In this document: one piece after another, positions 56,816-63,642 of the stretch
How the letters are laid out: every line of letters starts with the position of its first letter
Numbering within the stretch: the stretch's first letter is position 1
Origin: Asterias rubens
Lineage: Eukaryota
Assembly (NCBI RefSeq): GCF_902459465.1
Contig: NC_047067.1
Location: forward strand, 5,456,001 to 5,520,000
Length of the DNA: 64,000 nucleotides
Direction of reading: 5' to 3'
Position numbers and translations under genes: made by a program
Notes under the pieces: model-generated
What the model was told of the DNA's origin: nothing
Database searches by the model: none
Seen by the model: the letters and a program-made list of their open reading frames with translations, nothing else

Positions 56816-56968
56816 TTAGGATACTGCATCCAAAAGTAATTTCTTGACGACCAACGCTGCCTGATCGGTAGATGTTTGACCTTCATCACATCGTATGTCA
56901 AAGGTCAGAAGGTCATTCACCAGGTCAAGGGCGACTTCTATTAAGAACAGTTGCTTTGTGTGATCCTC
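56816..56968 (-). CDS. AP4B1: AP4B1 terminal exon
   Basis: EDHTKQLFLIEVALDLVNDLLTFDIRCDEGQTSTDQAALVVKKLLLDAVS*. Confidence 0.88.
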   Translation of the reverse strand, partial: EDHTKQLFLIEVALDLVNDLLTFDIRCDEGQTSTDQAALVVKKLLLDAVS

Positions 56969-59900
56969 CTATAATGAAAACAAAATGTTGTAATAATGAT
57001 CTCAGCATTAAAGGGAAGGTACACGTTTGGTAATTACTCAAAACAAATATTAACTTAAAAACTGACTTTGTAACTAGCATTGGAGAGCTGTTGATAGTAT
57101 AAAACATTGTGGGACACGGCTCCCTCTGAAACTTGTTAAGGTACGAGTAATATTCATTGTGTTTTCTGTAAATTGTGACTCACTCTGAAGTTTTTGAGAA
57201 AGAGGTAATTTCTCACTAAAATAATTAAAGACTTCTTGCTAGAAGTCTATCTAAAAGCACATAAATTCGTCCAACAAGGGTGTTTTTTCTTTCATAATTT
57301 TCTCGCAACTTCCACGACCGATTTAGCCCAAATTTTCACAGGCTTGTTATTTTATGCTTATGATGGGATACACAAAGTGTGAACACTGGTCTTTGACGAT
57401 TACCAAACGTGTACAGTGCCTTTAAGTAAGTGCCCTAATCATAGGCATGCTTTAGGGCACACATTCCATTTTGTGCATCCGTGTGGAGGCATCTTTTATT
57501 CTTTTATGTTGTTTCTGTAGTTAAGAACCTCGCATAGACTTTGTACACAAAATTCTGTGTGGAAACCCAAGTCTTTATGGCAAGACCTTTGTTTTCCCTT
57601 TTCTGTTTTGTTCTTGGTCTACATAGGGTAGTGATTATGAAATCACTGAAACAGTTGTACAAAGAAGTGGCACTGGAGGACACTACTTTCAGAAACAAGA
57701 AGCGGAAACAGTATAAAAAGGCTGGAGTAATTACTCAAAATATATATTAGCATAAAATCTTACTTGGTAACGAGCAACGGAGAAAGAACTTAAACTTCTC
57801 ACTTAAATATTTGAAACTGAGAAAGACTTCAGGCCTTTCTCAGGCATCTGAAAGCACACAAATTTGTGCAACAAGGGTGTTTTTTCTTTCATTACTTTCT
57901 TGCAACTTAAATGACCAATTGAGTCAAAATGTTCACAGAATTTTTCATTTTATGATAACCCAAGTGAGAATATTGGTCTTTGACAATTACCAAACATGTC
58001 CAGCGCCTTAAAATGATTCTAAAATCCGAATTTACACAATGTATGTCAATAGAGTACTGTTGTCAATTTTGGCTGGAGCTTGTGCCTGCCTTTTATCCTT
58101 ACTAAATCAAGTGCAGGCTTTCTGCTTGTTCTCATCCTTATACTGTGGCTTTGCGAGATGAAGAACAAAGATCTACTCTAGTAGCTTTTTCCCTCGTACT
58201 GCATCTCTTTGGAACTCCTTGCCTGGTGCATGTTTCCCTTCACCCTATGATCTGCCATCTTTTAAGAGGAATGTCAATTCCTACCTTCAGCTCCACTGAG
58301 TTTCTGCATTTCTATGTTCTCTTCCTTGTAACCCTTTACCTAGTGTGGCTTTTAGCCTTGTTTTAAGCAAACTTGCATAGTGAAAAATAATAACTCAAAG
58401 GATCTGCTGTGACTCTTTACCTTTGCATAAAGAAAAGCTCTCCATGGAGCAGAATCCTCCGGTGTGGTTGCCATGGTTTTACATCCTAGTTCTTCCAGTT
58501 GTCTCTGGATGTCTTTGGGCTGTAGAGACTTCATTATTTTGAGCTCTTGCAATTCACTGAAAAGGAATTGAATTGATTTTTTTTTTTTTTTTTTTTGTGG
58601 ATCAGAAAGTTAAAACTAAAAGGTTTCTTTTATGAGCTTGCTCCCTTCAGTAGTCATGGTGAGAAAACTTCAAGGGCAACGAAACGATCAGATTTGAGAA
58701 CACAATCTTACAAGTTTTCCTTAAAAAAAAAGGTTTTATGAAAACCCTAAAAGGAAGGTTTACGTTTGGTAGCCACTCCTCAAATTAATGCAAATAAAAA
58801 CCTGCTTGGCTTGAAGTACAGCAGCTTCCAATAATATGAAGCATTTGAGAATCATTTCACTTTGAAGTAACAAGGTTATGAAAAAAAGATATCACTTTTT
58901 ATCCCTAAAAATTTGAATATTAGAAAATTACTGTCAGAAACATCGTCTCAGATTGTGTATTCCAATTACAAATTATTCTTCCTGCATGGACAAAACCGCT
59001 CGGGTTTTTTGGCGTGGGTTCTGAAAAGAACCGGTGGTTAACGACCCTAAACAAGTTAGTTTTGTTGTATATATTTACATTTAATATCAACAATTGCACA
59101 GCTTCAAACACCAAAGGTTTACGATCCCTTTGTTACGTACCAGCTCTTCCACGTGGTCCATTTCCCTTCAAACTCCTCCGGTGCTAAACTGACATTGGTG
59201 AGGAATTTGGCCTCAGTGGTGACCCGAGTGACTGTCTCTGTAGCGACCCCATCAGAACGGACTGCTGACATGACCTCTGGCTCAACACCACCTAAACTGA
59301 CCAGTGTAGACATGACCTCTGGCTCAACACCACCTAAACTGACCAGTGTAGACATGACCTCTGGCTCAACACCACCTAAACTGACCAGTGTAGACGCCAC
59401 GGGAATGGCCTCTGCTTCATTCTCCAACATGACTTCCGGTGTGACCTCAGAGTTGAACTCAGATGTGACCCCGTCTAAGTCCAGCAGCTGGCCGGTGGCT
59501 GTGATGTCAAGTTCTAGCTCACCATCGTTTGGTTTAAGCTCAACAAATGATAGAGGACTGTGGCCTTCATTTTCCTCTCCATAATTAGATTTTTGGATTT
59601 CTCTCCATCTATCTGGTCCTGAAAACAAACAGAAAGAAGAATAATGCAATAACTTAAGTTTTAAAGTCCTGTTTGAAGTAAATGCAGATGATCGTAACGA
59701 TTACACTTATGATTTTGTCTAGGTAATGTACAACTCTTTTTTAACGTAGCTCCACCAATACCAAAAGACTGAATGTTGAGGTGCTTTTGGCATCACTGAG
59801 TGACGGATATGAGAGCTATATAAAAGAAGCCACTATTTATACTGGTAGTGCCAGAGCCTGTCTTCTTGATAATCTAGATATGGGAGAAGTCTGAGTAACC

Positions 59901-62900
59901 AGTGTATGCCGAATACCAGTCTTTTGCCCACGTGAAACCAATACTTACCAAACAGTAAAGCTATGGAGTTGAAATGGTGAACATCCGCTGATGTGTCACT
60001 GGGACACGGTACTGGTAGGCGAGACGGAGGTGCGCTTATGATATCCTTTGCCTGCCAAAGTACAAGATGCCTCAATAAGTACAACGAGCTGGGCTCAATT
60101 TCATAAAGCTTTTAAGCAGAAAAACACTGCATGACAAATATCTTTGCCAAGCGAAAATTGAGTCAGGCACCAGCCACAACAATGCAAACTTAATGTGTTT
60201 TGGGCTGATAACCTTTTTTTGCTAAGCAATACTTTTCTGTGCTTAGCAAGTTTTTGTGCGCATCAGGCTTTACAATTTTGGGTCCTGTTAATTCCAAATT
60301 AAGCATGGCTTTTTATTTATTAATTTTTTTATTTTTGTTAAAGTTTTTTGGATCCTGGTGTTGGGCACGTTGGGTTGGAGTCTTTGGTCAGAAAGAATCC
60401 CGTGAGTGAATTTTATTTAACAGTATCCATCACAAATTAGTTTAAAATATTTTATTCTGAATTCTACAAATGAATCAAATTGCTTCAGTTAACTTGAATT
60501 GGAATTGATTGTTCAAAACATCAGAGATCAATTGTCAAATGAAGTGTTACCTTTTGGACGTCTTTGCTTAGGAGTCTATAGTACATCTTTGCCTTTTCCT
60601 GGAGATCAGCATTACTCTCACATTCTTTGACAATAGACAGTTATCAAGAAGGAAAGTTGAATAAAAGTCAGAAGTACAAGTTGTATTTACATTTTGCTTT
60701 TAAATGATGATCAAAACATTTGTGACAACAACCAGGAGACTTTAATTATTTTGGGAATTTGGTGATCTTTTACTGTGGCTTATGGCTACAGCAGCCATGT
60801 TGAAGTGATCTAGCCAAAGACCAACATTCTTTGGTCATTATTATTGGAATGCTAGATTTAAGGGTGGCTGTGTCTGATGGCTACATCAGCCACATTGAAG
60901 TGATCTTGCCACCAAACTTTTGGCAATATTGGACCTTGGGTATCTTTAACTGTGGCTAGCAGTGGCTATGGCTACATCAGCCATACTGAAGTGATCAGGC
61001 TTTGACCATATTGGATCTTGAGTGTCTTTTTCTGTGGCTGTGGCTGAGGGCTACAGCAGTCATATTGAAGTCATCTAGCCAACATGCTTTGACCATATTG
61101 GATCTTGAGTGTCTTCTACTGTGGCTGTGGCTGAGGGCTACAGCAGCCATATTGAAGTGATCGAGCTAACATGCTTTGGCCATATTGGATCTAATTATGT
61201 GTCTTTTACTCTGGCTATGGCTGATGGTTATAACAGCCATGTTGAAAGAATCTAGCCAAAGACCACCAGGCTTTGGCTAAATTGGATCTTGTGTATATTT
61301 TACTGTGGCTGGGTCTTTAAGTGATTATGTGATATGGATATCTACTGTGGCCGGCTGTGGATGATGGCTACATCAGCCATGTTGAAGGGATCCAGCTGTA
61401 GCCACAGCTCTTACTGCAGACATATCTTTAGTACCTATAGCATACTCCAGAATCTTGCCTAGCATGTCTTGGCACTCGGCAGGCCTGATAAAGAACAGTT
61501 TGATAGTAGCTGTCAGCAAACTCAACTTGACCATCGTGTTACGCTCCTCCTCCAATGTGTCAATCATGCTTTCAAGAATGTATGGAGCATCAGGAAGATC
61601 CTGAAACAAATCATTGTGAATTAAATTACTCTCAGTCTTGTGGCGAGTGTTGGCCCAGCAGTTAAAGAGCATTGGACTCGAGCTCTTGTGTTTGTGATAA
61701 GCCGAGTGTTGGTTTGGTTCCTGGTCAAGACACTTGTATCCTTGTATACTTTGAATGGGACATTTAACGGTACTCCAAAAGGCTTATTCATACACAATAT
61801 CAACCTCTACCCTTCACAGGTACCCATTTACACCTCGGGTGAAACGGAGTCGTGATGACTTAACCATCAGAACATTTAAGTAAAGAAATACATTCTATGT
61901 GGGATTTGAGGCATTGCATGGTGAGGTGTCAATATATATTTGGTTTACAGTATTCACCATGTGTGTATATATTTGCCAGGTAGATCATGTTCTTTTAAGA
62001 ACTTGTCTTGCTTTATATTCTACTACCACGGAGTAAATTGTCGGAATACGAGAGACTTCTCAGCTCTGAAAAGAACTGTCCTGCTTTTTAACTACTACCT
62101 GGGCAGAAGGTGGAAAATTGCTACTTTATCTTTAGTAGATCGAGCGGACTTCTCGTTATAAACTTCACTGTCGTGGAGTGAGTTCTTAATTGGTCTCAAT
62201 GTTTCGACTAGCTTGCTCCAGTCATCCTCATGAGACTGTCACGAGACATTCTGAAAATACATTCAGGAAATTACCTGGCCATACTGAGCAATGAGCCCAA
62301 CCAGAGCAGCTTTACCACACGGCTCCTGGATGAGCTGCTCACATGACGGAAGTCTCTCAACCACTGCCGGGATGAAGTCTTTAAGATGCTCATAACGAAG
62401 GATGTCTGATGACGAGAAGAAAAAGCAAAAGGTGAGTCATCTTCAACACTGTTAAATTGGCATTTACATTATAGCATTATGGCGTGCTGTGGCTGAGCCG
62501 TTAAGAGCATGCAGTGGACTTAAGCTCTGGTGTTTCTGATCAGTAGAGTGTGGGTTTGAATGGTTCGTAGGTCCCATGTACTGTGATCAGTGGTGCTCAT
62601 AAAAGAACCCAGAACACTTATCATGGAAGAGCAGGAGCTAACACTATGTGTTTCTAGTTCACATAGCAAGCACTTTCTTTTACAGATCTCCTCAGGCTTG
62701 CCAGCTACAATGACTAACAAGAGGCATCTTTGGTTTCATTACCAGAAAAATATGATAATAATAATCATTATTTGCGTGTTCTACGGGAAACCCTGCAGTT
62801 AGGAAAATATCTTTTAAGAAAGTTGTTTCTTACCCTGGAAGACAACCAAGACTTGAGACGAGACAGAGTCGATCTGTAGTGAGAGTAAGGTGAGGAGAGC

Positions 62901-63593
62901 CTCCACACAGGGTCCTGAGTAAGCTATAGATGTGTTGGCGAGTTTCCCCAAGGCAGCCACAGCGAGATGGGATAGACGAATAGAGATATCTATTGCATAG
63001 ACACTAGAGAATGGGAGTAACTAGTTAGAGTAAGCATGTATACGAGTCACTGGCTGTGGCTAGAGGCACAGCTGCAATGATCTTATCAACCGTAGCCCAA
63101 TTTAATCCATTTACATAAAATCATAGCCACATTAGAGACATAATTTTAAAGCTCCATTTTGTCACATTCCCAGTATCCTATAACACGAATCAATGCTAGT
63201 ATCCAATAGGGGCCCAGACTAGTTTACTTTCTAGCCTGGGAAATGTTTCTGCATGAAACGTTCTTTCAAATTGTGCATTCCAATTACGTTTTTTTTTCCT
63301 GTGTGGACATAACTGCTCCAGATTTGTCGACAAGATCTCAAAAACACTACCACCTTTTGAAATAAAAGTTCAGTTTTATTGTATACATTATTTACATTTA
63401 TATTGGAGTAAAACAATCAAATGGTTCTAAAAACCAAAGGTATACTAAAGGTATTCTGTGCCTTCAAGGGTGGACTTTTTGAGTTCCGATCGCTCACCTT
63501 AGCTCTTCAACGATGTCCTTGAGCGAATCCTCAGAACACAGCGAGGACAACAGCTCAATCTTCTTGTACTTGACATAACCTGGATCATTGTAT
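56816..63593 (-). CDS. AP4B1: AP-4 complex subunit beta-1, 3' nine exons (5' part outside the window)
   Basis: Minus-strand exons 63498-63593, 62834-63003, 62275-62405, 61435-61600, 60551-60624, 59949-60051, 59141-59618, 58421-58556, 56816-56968, all GT-AG and phase-consistent. The peptides [55 protein letters not shown] and PWRAFLYAK..LFLIE match beta-4 adaptin as recalled ([45 protein letters not shown]..LFLTE). Confidence 0.93.
57008..57425 (+). mobile_element. Family A subfamily MITE
   Basis: TTAAAGGGAAGGTACACGTTTGGTAAT...TTACCAAACGTGTACAGTGCCTTTAA. Confidence 0.85.
57720..58010 (+). mobile_element. Family A-related fragment
   Basis: GTAATTACTCAAAA...GGTCTTTGACAATTACCAAAC. Confidence 0.65.
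58100..58345 (+). mobile_element. CR1/L2-clade LINE 3' remnant in an AP4B1 intron
   Basis: HPYTV../YSSSFFPRTASLWNSLPGACFPSPYDLPSFKRNVN, frameshifted. Confidence 0.75.
58421..58556 (-). CDS. AP4B1: AP4B1 ear exon
   Basis: ELQELKIMKSLQPKDIQRQLEELGCKTMATTPEDSAPWRAFLYAK. Confidence 0.9.
59141..59618 (-). CDS. AP4B1: AP4B1 hinge exon (expanded) and start of ear
   Basis: GPDRWREIQK...GQLLDLDG...(STLVSLGGVEPEVM)x3...FLTNVSLAPEEFEGKWTTWKS. Confidence 0.87.
59267..59392. repeat. Perfect 42-bp tandem repeat x3 in the AP4B1 coding sequence
   Basis: GACATGACCTCTGGCTCAACACCACCTAAACTGACCAGTGTA x3. Confidence 0.97.
59949..60051 (-). CDS. AP4B1: AP4B1 exon
   Basis: [34 protein letters not shown]; |GTAAGT. 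Confidence 0.88.
60551..60624 (-). CDS. AP4B1: AP4B1 exon (trunk end)
   Basis: ECESNADLQEKAKMYYRLLSKDVQK; not in the ORF track, found by phase and homology. Confidence 0.88.
60770..61396. repeat. Degenerate minisatellite (about 75-90 bp unit, about 8 copies) in an AP4B1 intron
   Basis: Recurring CTGTGGCT..GGCTACA(G/T)CAGCCAT.TTGAAGTGATC..CATATTGGATCTT. Confidence 0.85.
61435..61600 (-). CDS. AP4B1: AP4B1 exon (trunk)
   Basis: [55 protein letters not shown]. Confidence 0.93.
62275..62405 (-). CDS. AP4B1: AP4B1 exon (trunk)
   Basis: DILRYEHLKDFIPAVVERLPSCEQLIQEPCGKAALVGLIAQYGQ. Confidence 0.9.
62481..62645 (+). mobile_element. Second tRNA-derived SINE family
   Basis: GTGGCTGAGCCGTTAAGAGC head; related copies near 61640-61750, 39955-40020 and 49055-49200. 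Confidence 0.55.
62834..63003 (-). CDS. AP4B1: AP4B1 exon (trunk)
   Basis: VYAIDISIRLSHLAVAALGKLA...CVEALLTLLSLQIDSVSSQVLVVFQ. Confidence 0.9.
63498..63593 (-). CDS. AP4B1: AP4B1 exon (trunk)
   Basis: YNDPGYVKYKKIELLSSLCSEDSLKDIVEEL; phase 2/2. Confidence 0.9.
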
Positions 63594-63642
63594 CTGGAAG
63601 ACAATCAAAGGTCATTGTACAATTATAGCTGCGTTACTACTA

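What the first reader, a model, noticed from the sequence alone, without database searches (positions are those of the whole stretch)
59473..59487. Canonical clathrin box (LLDLD) in the hinge of AP-4 beta, a nominally clathrin-independent adaptor
Seen: GQ-LLDLD-G in an acidic, expanded hinge of roughly 130 aa between trunk and ear. Established: the clathrin-box consensus is L-phi-x-phi-[D/E] (LLNLD in beta1/beta2, LLDLD in beta3A). AP-4 is considered a non-clathrin coat, and mammalian beta4 has a short hinge with no such box. Inference: AP-4 may recruit clathrin in this lineage, either as a retained ancestral trait or a re-acquisition.
Basis: partly seen in the sequence, partly recalled or inferred. 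Interest (0 to 1): 0.7.

Follow-up and report, generated by a model that had tools for sequence, protein, structure and literature searches.

The report
Conserved clathrin-box motif in AP-4 beta
A sea-star gene for the beta subunit of the supposedly clathrin-free AP-4 vesicle adaptor carries an expressed, evolutionarily conserved clathrin-binding-type motif (LLDLD) in its flexible hinge, and related motifs sit at the same place in most non-vertebrate eukaryotes but not in vertebrates, which makes a direct AP-4–clathrin link testable.

Summary
Bases 59473-59487 (minus strand) read CTG CTG GAC TTA GAC, giving GQ-LLDLD-G. They lie in a 477-nt exon of the Asterias rubens AP4B1 gene that spliced RNA contigs include.

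AlphaFold2 puts the motif in a disordered, acidic hinge (pLDDT under 50) between the trunk and a platform-only ear.

The motif is not a chance 5-mer:
- It is identical in Asterias amurensis, Acanthaster and an unnamed asteroid, and reads LLDLN in Patiria.
- Other groups carry aligned variants: LVDID (brittle star), LVDLD (crinoid, Diadema), and LLNLD or LLSID (hemichordates).
- Box-like motifs also occur in Hydra, octocoral, sponge, green-alga and dinoflagellate hinges.
- The ELM clathrin-box pattern occurs in 24 of 62 non-vertebrate beta4 hinges (4.0 expected from shuffles) and in 1 of 75 vertebrate hinges.
- The first leucine is the only hinge position conserved at 90% or more across 36 eukaryotes.

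The motif is therefore an ancestral hinge feature that degenerated in chordates, not a sea-star novelty. Clathrin binding is inferred, not shown. Plant clathrin-coated-vesicle and Trypanosoma cruzi clathrin data make it plausible. I found no earlier description of this motif in the papers searched.

The parts
59473..59487 (-). LLDLD motif (CTG CTG GAC TTA GAC), residues 615-619 of the A. rubens AP4B1 protein P0157
   Evidence: Searches give the sequence. Searches show conservation. One search shows a disordered context (pLDDT under 50, with a 3-residue helical turn at 617-619). One search shows only synonymous differences against another asteroid.
59141..59618 (-). Hinge exon. It encodes the end of the trunk (GPDRW..), the whole acidic hinge and the first ear residues (EAKFLTNVSLAPEEFEGKWTTWKS). 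It is flanked by an AG acceptor and a GT donor.
   Evidence: table 8 (RNA contigs 59141-59296 and 59366-59617), (splice sites; tblastn of P0157).
59267..59395 (-). Perfect 42-nt tandem repeat, 3.1 copies, encoding STLVSLGGVEPEVM three times within the hinge
   Evidence: 100% matches. Copy number is 3 here, 2 in RefSeq A. rubens P0157, and 1 in A. amurensis P0178, in P0001 and in the organism-B transcript, which is 84 nt shorter.
63500..63595 (-). AP4B1 trunk exon (about residues 324-355). Residues 1-323 lie beyond the window end.
   Evidence: 100% identity. Boundaries are approximate.
62835..63005 (-). AP4B1 trunk exon (residues 356-412)
   Evidence: 100% identity. Boundaries are approximate.
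62275..62406 (-). AP4B1 trunk exon (residues 413-456)
61435..61600 (-). AP4B1 trunk exon (residues 456-511), used as the query for the representative search
60551..60624 (-). AP4B1 trunk exon (residues 512-536)
   Evidence: One search gives the only biologically sensible pair of exons summing to the 177 nt that the RNA contigs require..
59949..60051 (-). AP4B1 exon holding the last trunk helices (..ADVHHFNSIALLFG)
58421..58556 (-). Ear (platform subdomain) exon
   Evidence: Pfam B2-adapt-app_C, E about 1e-3; PDB 2mj7 human AP4B1 ear, E 0.76, weak; confident fold.
56816..56968 (-). Last coding exon of the ear, with the stop codon. The 3' UTR continues below.

Best explanation
Shown: LLDLD is the sea-star form of an ancient, selectively maintained short linear motif in the disordered hinge of AP-4 beta. 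In Ambulacraria it reads roughly [E/T]-G-x-L-[LVI]-D-[LI]-D. In other eukaryotes it reads [D/N]-L-L-[G/D/S]-hydrophobic-[D]. It is expressed, it is conserved amid otherwise unalignable hinge sequence, it fits the clathrin-box consensus L-hydrophobic-x-hydrophobic-[D/E], and it occupies the same architectural position as LLNLD in beta1/beta2 and LLDLD in beta3A.

[quoted passage not shown] This lets AP-4 engage clathrin directly in sea stars and in most non-chordate eukaryotes. Chordates let the motif decay (GHLISEE, DLLVEP, none in amphioxus), which gives the mammalian 'non-clathrin' AP-4.
For: - Sequence and expression.
- Disordered, accessible context: (pLDDT under 50 for 584-691, with confident trunk and ear).
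- Conservation: identical GQLLDLDGVT in A. amurensis, Acanthaster and an unnamed asteroid (P0001/L001) while the flanks diverge. Between the window and L001 the codons of T-G-Q-LLDLD differ only synonymously, while adjacent codons change residues.
- MAFFT puts the Ambulacrarian variants in one block (A2). In a 36-taxon eukaryote alignment the first Leu (L615) is the only hinge position at 90% or more (A4).
- Enrichment: the a-priori ELM regex occurs in 24 of 62 non-vertebrate hinges against 4.0 expected from shuffles (P about 5e-14), and in 1 of 75 vertebrate hinges against 2.4 expected. An ELM box or a DLL-type motif occurs in 51 of 64 non-vertebrate against 1 of 79 vertebrate hinges.
- Taxa with a strict box or a DLL-type motif ([DN]-L-L-[GD]) include Hydra, Prasinoderma, Alexandrium, Chrysoparadoxa and Fabomonas. 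Land plants keep DDLLGLG.
- Literature: all AP-4 subunits are abundant in Arabidopsis clathrin-coated vesicles, and the authors ask whether binding is direct (bioRxiv 10.1101/2021.09.16.460678). T. cruzi clathrin pulls down AP-4 and tepsin (PMC4977521). P. falciparum tepsin proximity labelling finds clathrin and AP-4 epsilon (PMC12323583).
Against: - No binding data exist for any echinoderm.
- Mammalian AP-4 does not bind clathrin and is absent from clathrin-coated vesicles (PMC6627992, PMC12923877).
- In Arabidopsis, yeast two-hybrid found no AP4B-CHC2 N-terminal-domain interaction, and AP4M-GFP pulled down much less clathrin than AP-1. AP1B was also negative in that two-hybrid assay, so the assay is insensitive for beta subunits (PMC7997971).
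- The final acidic residue is not kept in Patiria (N), two urchins (S), Apostichopus (T), Anneissia (A) or land plants (G). The strictly conserved core is therefore only L-hydrophobic-x-hydrophobic, which also fits other motif classes such as SUMO-interaction motifs.
- A clathrin box can bind in vitro and still be dispensable in vivo, as for AP-3 beta3A LLDLD (PMC2199225).
- The enrichment test treats related sequences as independent. Several dinoflagellates and two Asterias species inflate the count, although the positives span many phyla.
Confidence: 0.55

Rival explanations
1. The motif is a real, conserved short linear motif, but its partner is not clathrin. Three possibilities: it docks back onto the AP-4 core or ear as an autoregulatory latch, as the beta2 hinge box does in closed AP-2; it recruits an unidentified AP-4 scaffold or accessory protein; or it acts as a SUMO-interaction-type hydrophobic-acidic strand.
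For: - Conservation is as strong as for the main explanation, but the conserved core is L-hydrophobic-x-hydrophobic with a variable last residue. This also fits the hydrophobic-hydrophobic-x-hydrophobic pattern of SUMO-interaction motifs as I know it.
- No outer scaffold for AP-4 coats, which are described as non-clathrin, is named in the papers read (PMC12923877).
- Arabidopsis AP4B was negative against the clathrin N-terminal domain in yeast two-hybrid (PMC7997971).
Against: - The position, the disordered acidic context and the exact strings (LLDLD, LLNLD, LLDMD, LLGLD, tandem DLLGxxDLLG) are those of known clathrin ligands in the paralogous beta1/2/3 hinges and in AP180-type proteins.
- AP-4 associates with clathrin in plants and T. 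cruzi (10.1101/2021.09.16.460678, PMC4977521).
- The papers read name no beta4-hinge partner.
Confidence: 0.3
2. The motif can bind clathrin but is functionally marginal. It would be a weakly selected relic, like the beta3A LLDLD, and sea-star AP-4 carriers would be essentially clathrin-free as in mammals.
For: - AP-3 works with its LLDLD mutated (PMC2199225).
- The last acidic residue drifts in several echinoderms.
- Chordates lost the motif yet retain AP-4.
Against: The core has been kept across groups as distant as asteroids, crinoids, hemichordates, cnidarians, sponges, green algae and dinoflagellates, while every other hinge position turned over. Synonymous-only change in the motif codons argues for continuing purifying selection.
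Confidence: 0.12
3. LLDLD is a chance 5-mer in a leucine- and acid-rich disordered linker and has no function.
For: Loose clathrin-box patterns arise by chance: shuffles of these hinges give about 0.06 hits per hinge (4.0 in 62).
Against: - The motif is identical in four asteroids of two orders.
- Aligned variants occur across Ambulacraria.
- It shows a six-fold excess over shuffles.
- It holds the only hinge column conserved at 90% or more.
Confidence: 0.03

Closest known systems
Clathrin box of AP-1/AP-2 beta1/beta2 hinges (LLNLD)
   Same: It has the same consensus and the same place: the disordered hinge of a beta-adaptin between trunk and ear. The hemichordate Glandiceps beta4 even reads LLNLD.
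   Different: The host complex is AP-4, which the papers read describe as lacking any clathrin-binding motif (PMC6627992, PMC12923877). The beta4 ear has only the platform subdomain. Binding is untested.
AP-3 beta3A hinge LLDLD
   Same: It is the identical pentapeptide in a beta-adaptin hinge of a complex whose clathrin dependence is debated.
   Different: The beta3A box binds clathrin in vitro but is dispensable for function (PMC2199225). No equivalent experiment exists for beta4.
Plant AP-4 in clathrin-coated vesicles (Arabidopsis AP4B, 'beta-adaptin-like protein A')
   Same: It is the orthologous subunit. Its hinge carries a conserved LL-centred motif that aligns to the same hinge column, DDLLGLG, plus an upstream NDxDLLLS. 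AP-4 is biochemically enriched in plant clathrin-coated vesicles (10.1101/2021.09.16.460678).
   Different: The plant motif usually lacks the terminal acid: only 21 of 115 plant-lineage (mostly land-plant) hinges have a strict ELM box. Yeast two-hybrid with the clathrin N-terminal domain was negative (PMC7997971).
DLL-type clathrin-binding repeats of AP180/CALM and epsin-type proteins
   Same: Many protist and plant beta4 hinges carry one to three DLLG/DLLD units, for example DLLGMDDLLG in dinoflagellates.
   Different: The sea-star hinge has a single canonical box rather than multiple DLL units. That DLL repeats bind clathrin comes from my own knowledge of the literature and was not checked here.

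Membership tests
AP-4 complex beta subunit (AP4B1 orthologue) | Beta-adaptin trunk whose best matches are AP4B1, not beta1/2/3 | tested here: met
   The window exons are 100% identical to RefSeq AP-4 complex subunit beta-1-like [Asterias rubens]. The trunk exon retrieves AP4B1 proteins of many phyla.
AP-4 complex beta subunit (AP4B1 orthologue) | Ear made of the platform subdomain only (no beta-sandwich), about 120 aa after the hinge | tested here: met
   In the AlphaFold2 model the confident ear is residues 695-811 only. Pfam B2-adapt-app_C matches the ear exon. There is a weak match to the human AP4B1 ear 2mj7. PMC3191125 states that beta4 has only the platform subdomain.
Clathrin box (ELM LIG_Clathr_ClatBox_1) | Sequence pattern L[IVLMF].[IVLMF][DE] | tested here: met
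   LLDLD at 59473-59487 on the minus strand. The regex was taken from my knowledge of ELM.
Clathrin box (ELM LIG_Clathr_ClatBox_1) | Lies in an intrinsically disordered, accessible region of a cytosolic trafficking protein | tested here: met
   pLDDT is 27-31 across residues 590-690, with no packed structure. The hinge has 25 acidic and 7 basic residues.
Clathrin box (ELM LIG_Clathr_ClatBox_1) | Conserved among orthologues beyond the background of the surrounding linker | tested here: met
Clathrin box (ELM LIG_Clathr_ClatBox_1) | Binds the clathrin heavy-chain N-terminal domain in a motif-dependent way | not testable with these tools
Clathrin adaptor complex (component of clathrin-coated vesicles) | Complex co-enriches with clathrin-coated vesicles or co-localises with clathrin | not testable with these tools
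   No echinoderm data were found. The answer is positive in Arabidopsis (10.1101/2021.09.16.460678) and negative in mammals (PMC6627992).

The most novel reading that the evidence does not exclude
AP-4 was ancestrally a clathrin adaptor. On this reading, a beta4-hinge clathrin box or DLL motif dates back to the last eukaryotic common ancestor and still mediates direct AP-4-clathrin binding in echinoderms, hemichordates, cnidarians, sponges, plants and many protists. The textbook 'non-clathrin' AP-4 coat would then be a derived chordate condition caused by decay of this motif.
Probability: 0.35. Interest if true: 0.85.

Novelty: new variant of a known kind. Interest (0 to 1): 0.65.

Why it matters
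Reviews and a 2026 AP-4 structure paper describe AP-4 as a coat that cannot bind clathrin. That view rests on mammalian work (PMC6627992, PMC12923877). Proteomics in plants and trypanosomes contradicts it, and the plant authors explicitly ask whether the AP-4-clathrin link is direct (10.1101/2021.09.16.460678).

A positionally conserved clathrin-box-type motif in the beta4 hinge of most non-chordate eukaryotes, absent from vertebrates, offers a concrete molecular candidate for that link. It also offers an evolutionary explanation for the discrepancy. It turns the question into a simple experiment: hinge pull-downs and motif mutants in sea star, sea urchin, Hydra or Arabidopsis.

It bears as well on what scaffolds AP-4 carriers in humans, where AP-4 loss causes hereditary spastic paraplegia (PMC9635299).

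Tried and rejected
- **Pfam scans of single exons.** These gave only a weak B2-adapt-app_C hit on the ear exon and nothing for the trunk exons. Identity was settled through orthologue searches instead.
- **The search for homologous proteins with the hinge exon alone.** It returned a single 130-aa fragment because of the length filter. The fragment was still useful as a fourth asteroid.
- **Hirst et al. 1999 (PMC25515).** The paper is not held, and one literature query was malformed.
- **Prior reports.** Six literature searches found no paper describing a clathrin box or conserved motif in any beta4 hinge. This covers only the library searched and does not show that none exists.
- **Alternative motif classes rejected:**
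  - The [DE]xxxL[LI] dileucine signal needs an acid at -4, present only in Acanthaster and Patiria.
  - DxxLL fails because sea stars have T at -3.
  - An LC3-interacting region needs an aromatic residue, and there is none.
  - The gamma-ear motif hydrophobic-G-[PDE]-hydrophobic fits only a few protists.
  - The tepsin-type LFxG[ML]x[LV] motif has its G in the wrong register.
- **Not excluded.** A SUMO-interaction-type reading cannot be ruled out from sequence alone.
- **The repeat unit STLVSLGGVEPEVM.** It contains LVSLG, a degenerate box-like string, but this is not conserved in the other asteroid (STEINLGG). I do not count it as a second motif.
- **Complex structure prediction with clathrin.** This was not possible because the tool takes single chains only.
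Full report
**What is there**

The minus strand of 56.8-63.6 kb carries the C-terminal 60% of an AP-4 beta (AP4B1) gene. Six-frame reading shows trunk-like, hinge-like and ear-like ORF pieces.

Contigs from four public runs under three coded organism labels lie on the window with the introns removed. They define the exons 62274-62406, 61435-61599, 59141-59617, 58420-58556 and ..56967 (table 8). Because the contigs are spliced, they come from RNA. Splice-site inspection shifts some ends by one base. A search for AG..GT exons that fill the 177 nt missing from the contigs gives one sensible pair, 60551-60624 and 59949-60051.

I tested that. tblastn of the RefSeq protein 'AP-4 complex subunit beta-1-like isoform X3 [Asterias rubens]' (P0157, found) matches the exons outside the hinge repeat, away from splice junctions, at 100% identity, for residues 324-811. 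Residues 1-323 lie beyond the window end.

**The observation**

Bases 59473-59487 read, on the minus strand, CTG CTG GAC TTA GAC = LLDLD, within ..TATGQ-LLDLD-GVTSE...

An AlphaFold2 model of P0157, built on a 36-sequence alignment, has a confident helical trunk and a confident ear at residues 695-811. The ear is small (one sheet plus helices, about 115 residues), as expected for a platform-only beta4 ear. The region between them is a 108-residue stretch (584-691) with pLDDT below 50. LLDLD (615-619) lies inside it, with only a three-residue helical turn predicted at 617-619.

The hinge has 25 acidic and 7 basic residues.

The hinge also contains a perfect 42-nt repeat of 3.1 copies at 59267-59395, encoding STLVSLGGVEPEVM. 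The window has three units and RefSeq P0157 has two. A. amurensis, the organism-B transcript (84 nt shorter) and an unnamed asteroid fragment each have one. Part of the 'expanded hinge' is therefore a very recent, probably polymorphic duplication unrelated to the motif.

**Is the motif more than chance?**

I collected orthologues in three steps:
- a full HMMER scan with the trunk exon 61436-61600;
- word-indexed searches with the crinoid protein P0006 and the alga protein P0139;
- the hinge exon itself, which found a genomic ORF from another asteroid (P0001, locus L001, Logan SRR26532981).

Hinge strings:

| Group | Species | Hinge string |
|---|---|---|
| Asteroids | A. rubens, A. amurensis, P0001, Acanthaster | GQLLDLDGVT |
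| Asteroid | Patiria | SQLLDLNEV |
| Brittle star | Amphiura | GQLVDIDES |
| Urchin | Diadema | GTLVDLDTE, plus LLGVD |
| Urchins | Strongylocentrotus, Lytechinus | GMLVDLSL[D/E]D |
| Sea cucumber | Apostichopus | GQLIDITAV |
| Crinoids | Antedon; Anneissia | GTLVDLDIF; GTLVDIASD |
| Hemichordates | Glandiceps; Saccoglossus; Ptychodera | GHLLNLDEE; ANLLSIDDG; GNLVSIGDD |

Around the motif the hinges are otherwise unalignable. For example, Acanthaster has EADDYSESEASIAAPKPTEESTASVPE where Asterias has EENEGHSPLSFVELKPNDGELELDITA.

MAFFT nevertheless places all these strings in one block. The first Leu is the only hinge position conserved at 90% or more (A2). The same residue, L615, is the only hinge column at 90% or more in a 36-taxon alignment spanning animals, a choanoflagellate, amoebozoan, ancyromonad, stramenopile, dinoflagellate, green algae and land plants (A4).

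At the DNA level, the window and L001 differ in the T-G-Q-L-L-D-L-D codons only synonymously (ACC/ACA, GGC/GGT, TTA/TTG). The codons just upstream change amino acids.

**Beyond Ambulacraria**

Box-like motifs occur in these beta4 hinges:

| Taxon | Hinge motif |
|---|---|
| Hydra | DLLGVDD |
| Octocorals | LVEID, LLPVD |
| Sponge Oscarella | DLVSLDE |
| Green alga Prasinoderma | NLLDLDAD |
| Dinoflagellate Alexandrium, and related unnamed sequences | DLLCMDDFLG; DLLGMDDLLG |
| Several unnamed protists | LLGID+LLSLD, LLGMD, LLDMD, LLGLD |

Most remaining non-vertebrate hinges carry one to three [D/N]LL[G/D] units. Examples are Chrysoparadoxa (DLLGLMDD), Fabomonas (DLLDMG), Porites (NLLGED) and Corticium (DLLGFG). 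Plant-lineage AP4B proteins (almost all land plants, annotated 'beta-adaptin-like protein A') keep NDxDLLLS and DDLLGLG. Of 115 such hinges, 102 have [DN]LL[GD] but only 21 have a strict box.

Vertebrate hinges align GHLISEE, DLLVEP or nothing at this place, and amphioxus has nothing.

**Statistics**

I set hinge limits by two conserved anchors in a MAFFT alignment. The a-priori ELM pattern L[IVLMF].[IVLMF][DE] then occurs as follows:

| Set | Hinges with the pattern | Expected from shuffles | Tail probability |
|---|---|---|---|
| Non-vertebrate | 24 of 62 | 4.0 | about 5e-14 |
| Vertebrate | 1 of 75 | 2.4 | not enriched |

The shuffles preserve composition. An ELM box or a DLL-type unit occurs in 51 of 64 non-vertebrate and 1 of 79 vertebrate hinges.

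One caveat applies. The sequences are not phylogenetically independent: several are dinoflagellates and two are Asterias. The P value is therefore only indicative. The positives do span many phyla, and the positional alignment is independent evidence.

**What it most likely does**

Shown:
- The motif is expressed, disordered and under purifying selection.
- It matches the clathrin-box consensus.
- It sits where beta1/beta2 (LLNLD) and beta3A (LLDLD) carry theirs.

Inferred: the motif binds the clathrin heavy-chain terminal domain.

Support from papers:
- All four AP-4 subunits are about as abundant as AP-1 and AP-2 in Arabidopsis clathrin-coated vesicles. The authors ask whether binding is direct (10.1101/2021.09.16.460678).
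- T. cruzi clathrin light-chain and EpsinR pull-downs recover AP-4 and tepsin (PMC4977521).
- P. falciparum tepsin proximity labelling finds clathrin and AP-4 epsilon. That paper also cites an immuno-EM report of AP-4 with clathrin in MDCK cells (PMC12323583).

Against:
- Mammalian AP-4 is described as unable to bind clathrin (PMC6627992; PMC12923877).
- Arabidopsis AP4B was negative against the clathrin N-terminal domain in yeast two-hybrid. AP1B was negative too, so the assay is uninformative for beta subunits (PMC7997971).
- The AP-3 LLDLD is dispensable in vivo (PMC2199225).
- The last acidic residue drifts in several lineages.
- The papers read assign no partner to the beta4 hinge. A non-clathrin ligand or an autoregulatory role therefore remains a serious rival.

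**Comparison and novelty**

The gene is annotated and ordinary. A clathrin box in a beta-adaptin hinge is a known kind of feature. What appears new is twofold. AP-4 beta, the paradigm 'non-clathrin' adaptor subunit, carries such a motif. The motif is also ancestral and widespread, and was lost in chordates. Six literature searches found no description of this; that covers only the library searched. A precedent for lineage-specific loss of clathrin-binding regions in a beta subunit exists in higher-fungal AP-2 (PMC5338921).

I classify the finding as a new variant of a known kind.

**Verdict**

- Clathrin recruitment is plausible but untested, at about 0.55.
- Interest is 0.65.

Noticed in passing
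window 59267-59395 (minus-strand coding): A perfect 42-nt tandem repeat adds in-frame copies of STLVSLGGVEPEVM to the hinge. There are three units in this window, two in RefSeq A. rubens isoform X3 (P0157), and one in A. amurensis, in a related species' transcript and in another asteroid. It looks like a very recent, probably polymorphic coding minisatellite. RNA contigs break inside it.
   Followed up: partly
window 60919-61259 (intron of AP4B1): An 87-nt tandem repeat of 3-4 copies, 79-86% matches, lies inside the intron between exons 61435-61600 and 60551-60624. It reads as spurious repeated ORFs (..HFNMAAVA(L/I)SHS..).
   Followed up: partly
window 56900-58100, 60100-60300, 61700-62300, 62500-62700: Intronic stretches attract summed contig word depths of 1e4-1e6 and hundreds of partial contigs at 85-95% identity in all four runs. 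They are evidently high-copy interspersed repeats that are transcribed or present in many loci.
   Followed up: no
Vertebrate AP4B1 hinges (e.g. P0165, P0166) aligned in A2: Rodent GHLISEE and coelacanth DLLVEP align exactly under the invertebrate GxLLDLD block. They look like decayed remnants of the motif rather than unrelated sequence.
   Followed up: partly
Plant-lineage AP4B hinges (P0293-P0411, almost all land plants): Two separately conserved hinge motifs, NDxDLLLS (proximal) and [I/F/L]DDLLGLG (distal), are kept from Selaginella and Sphagnum to angiosperms. The distal DDLLG core is already present in the streptophyte alga Chlorokybus. They are candidate direct clathrin-binding sites for the AP-4 found in plant clathrin-coated vesicles.
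   Followed up: partly
I did not examine it here.
   Followed up: no
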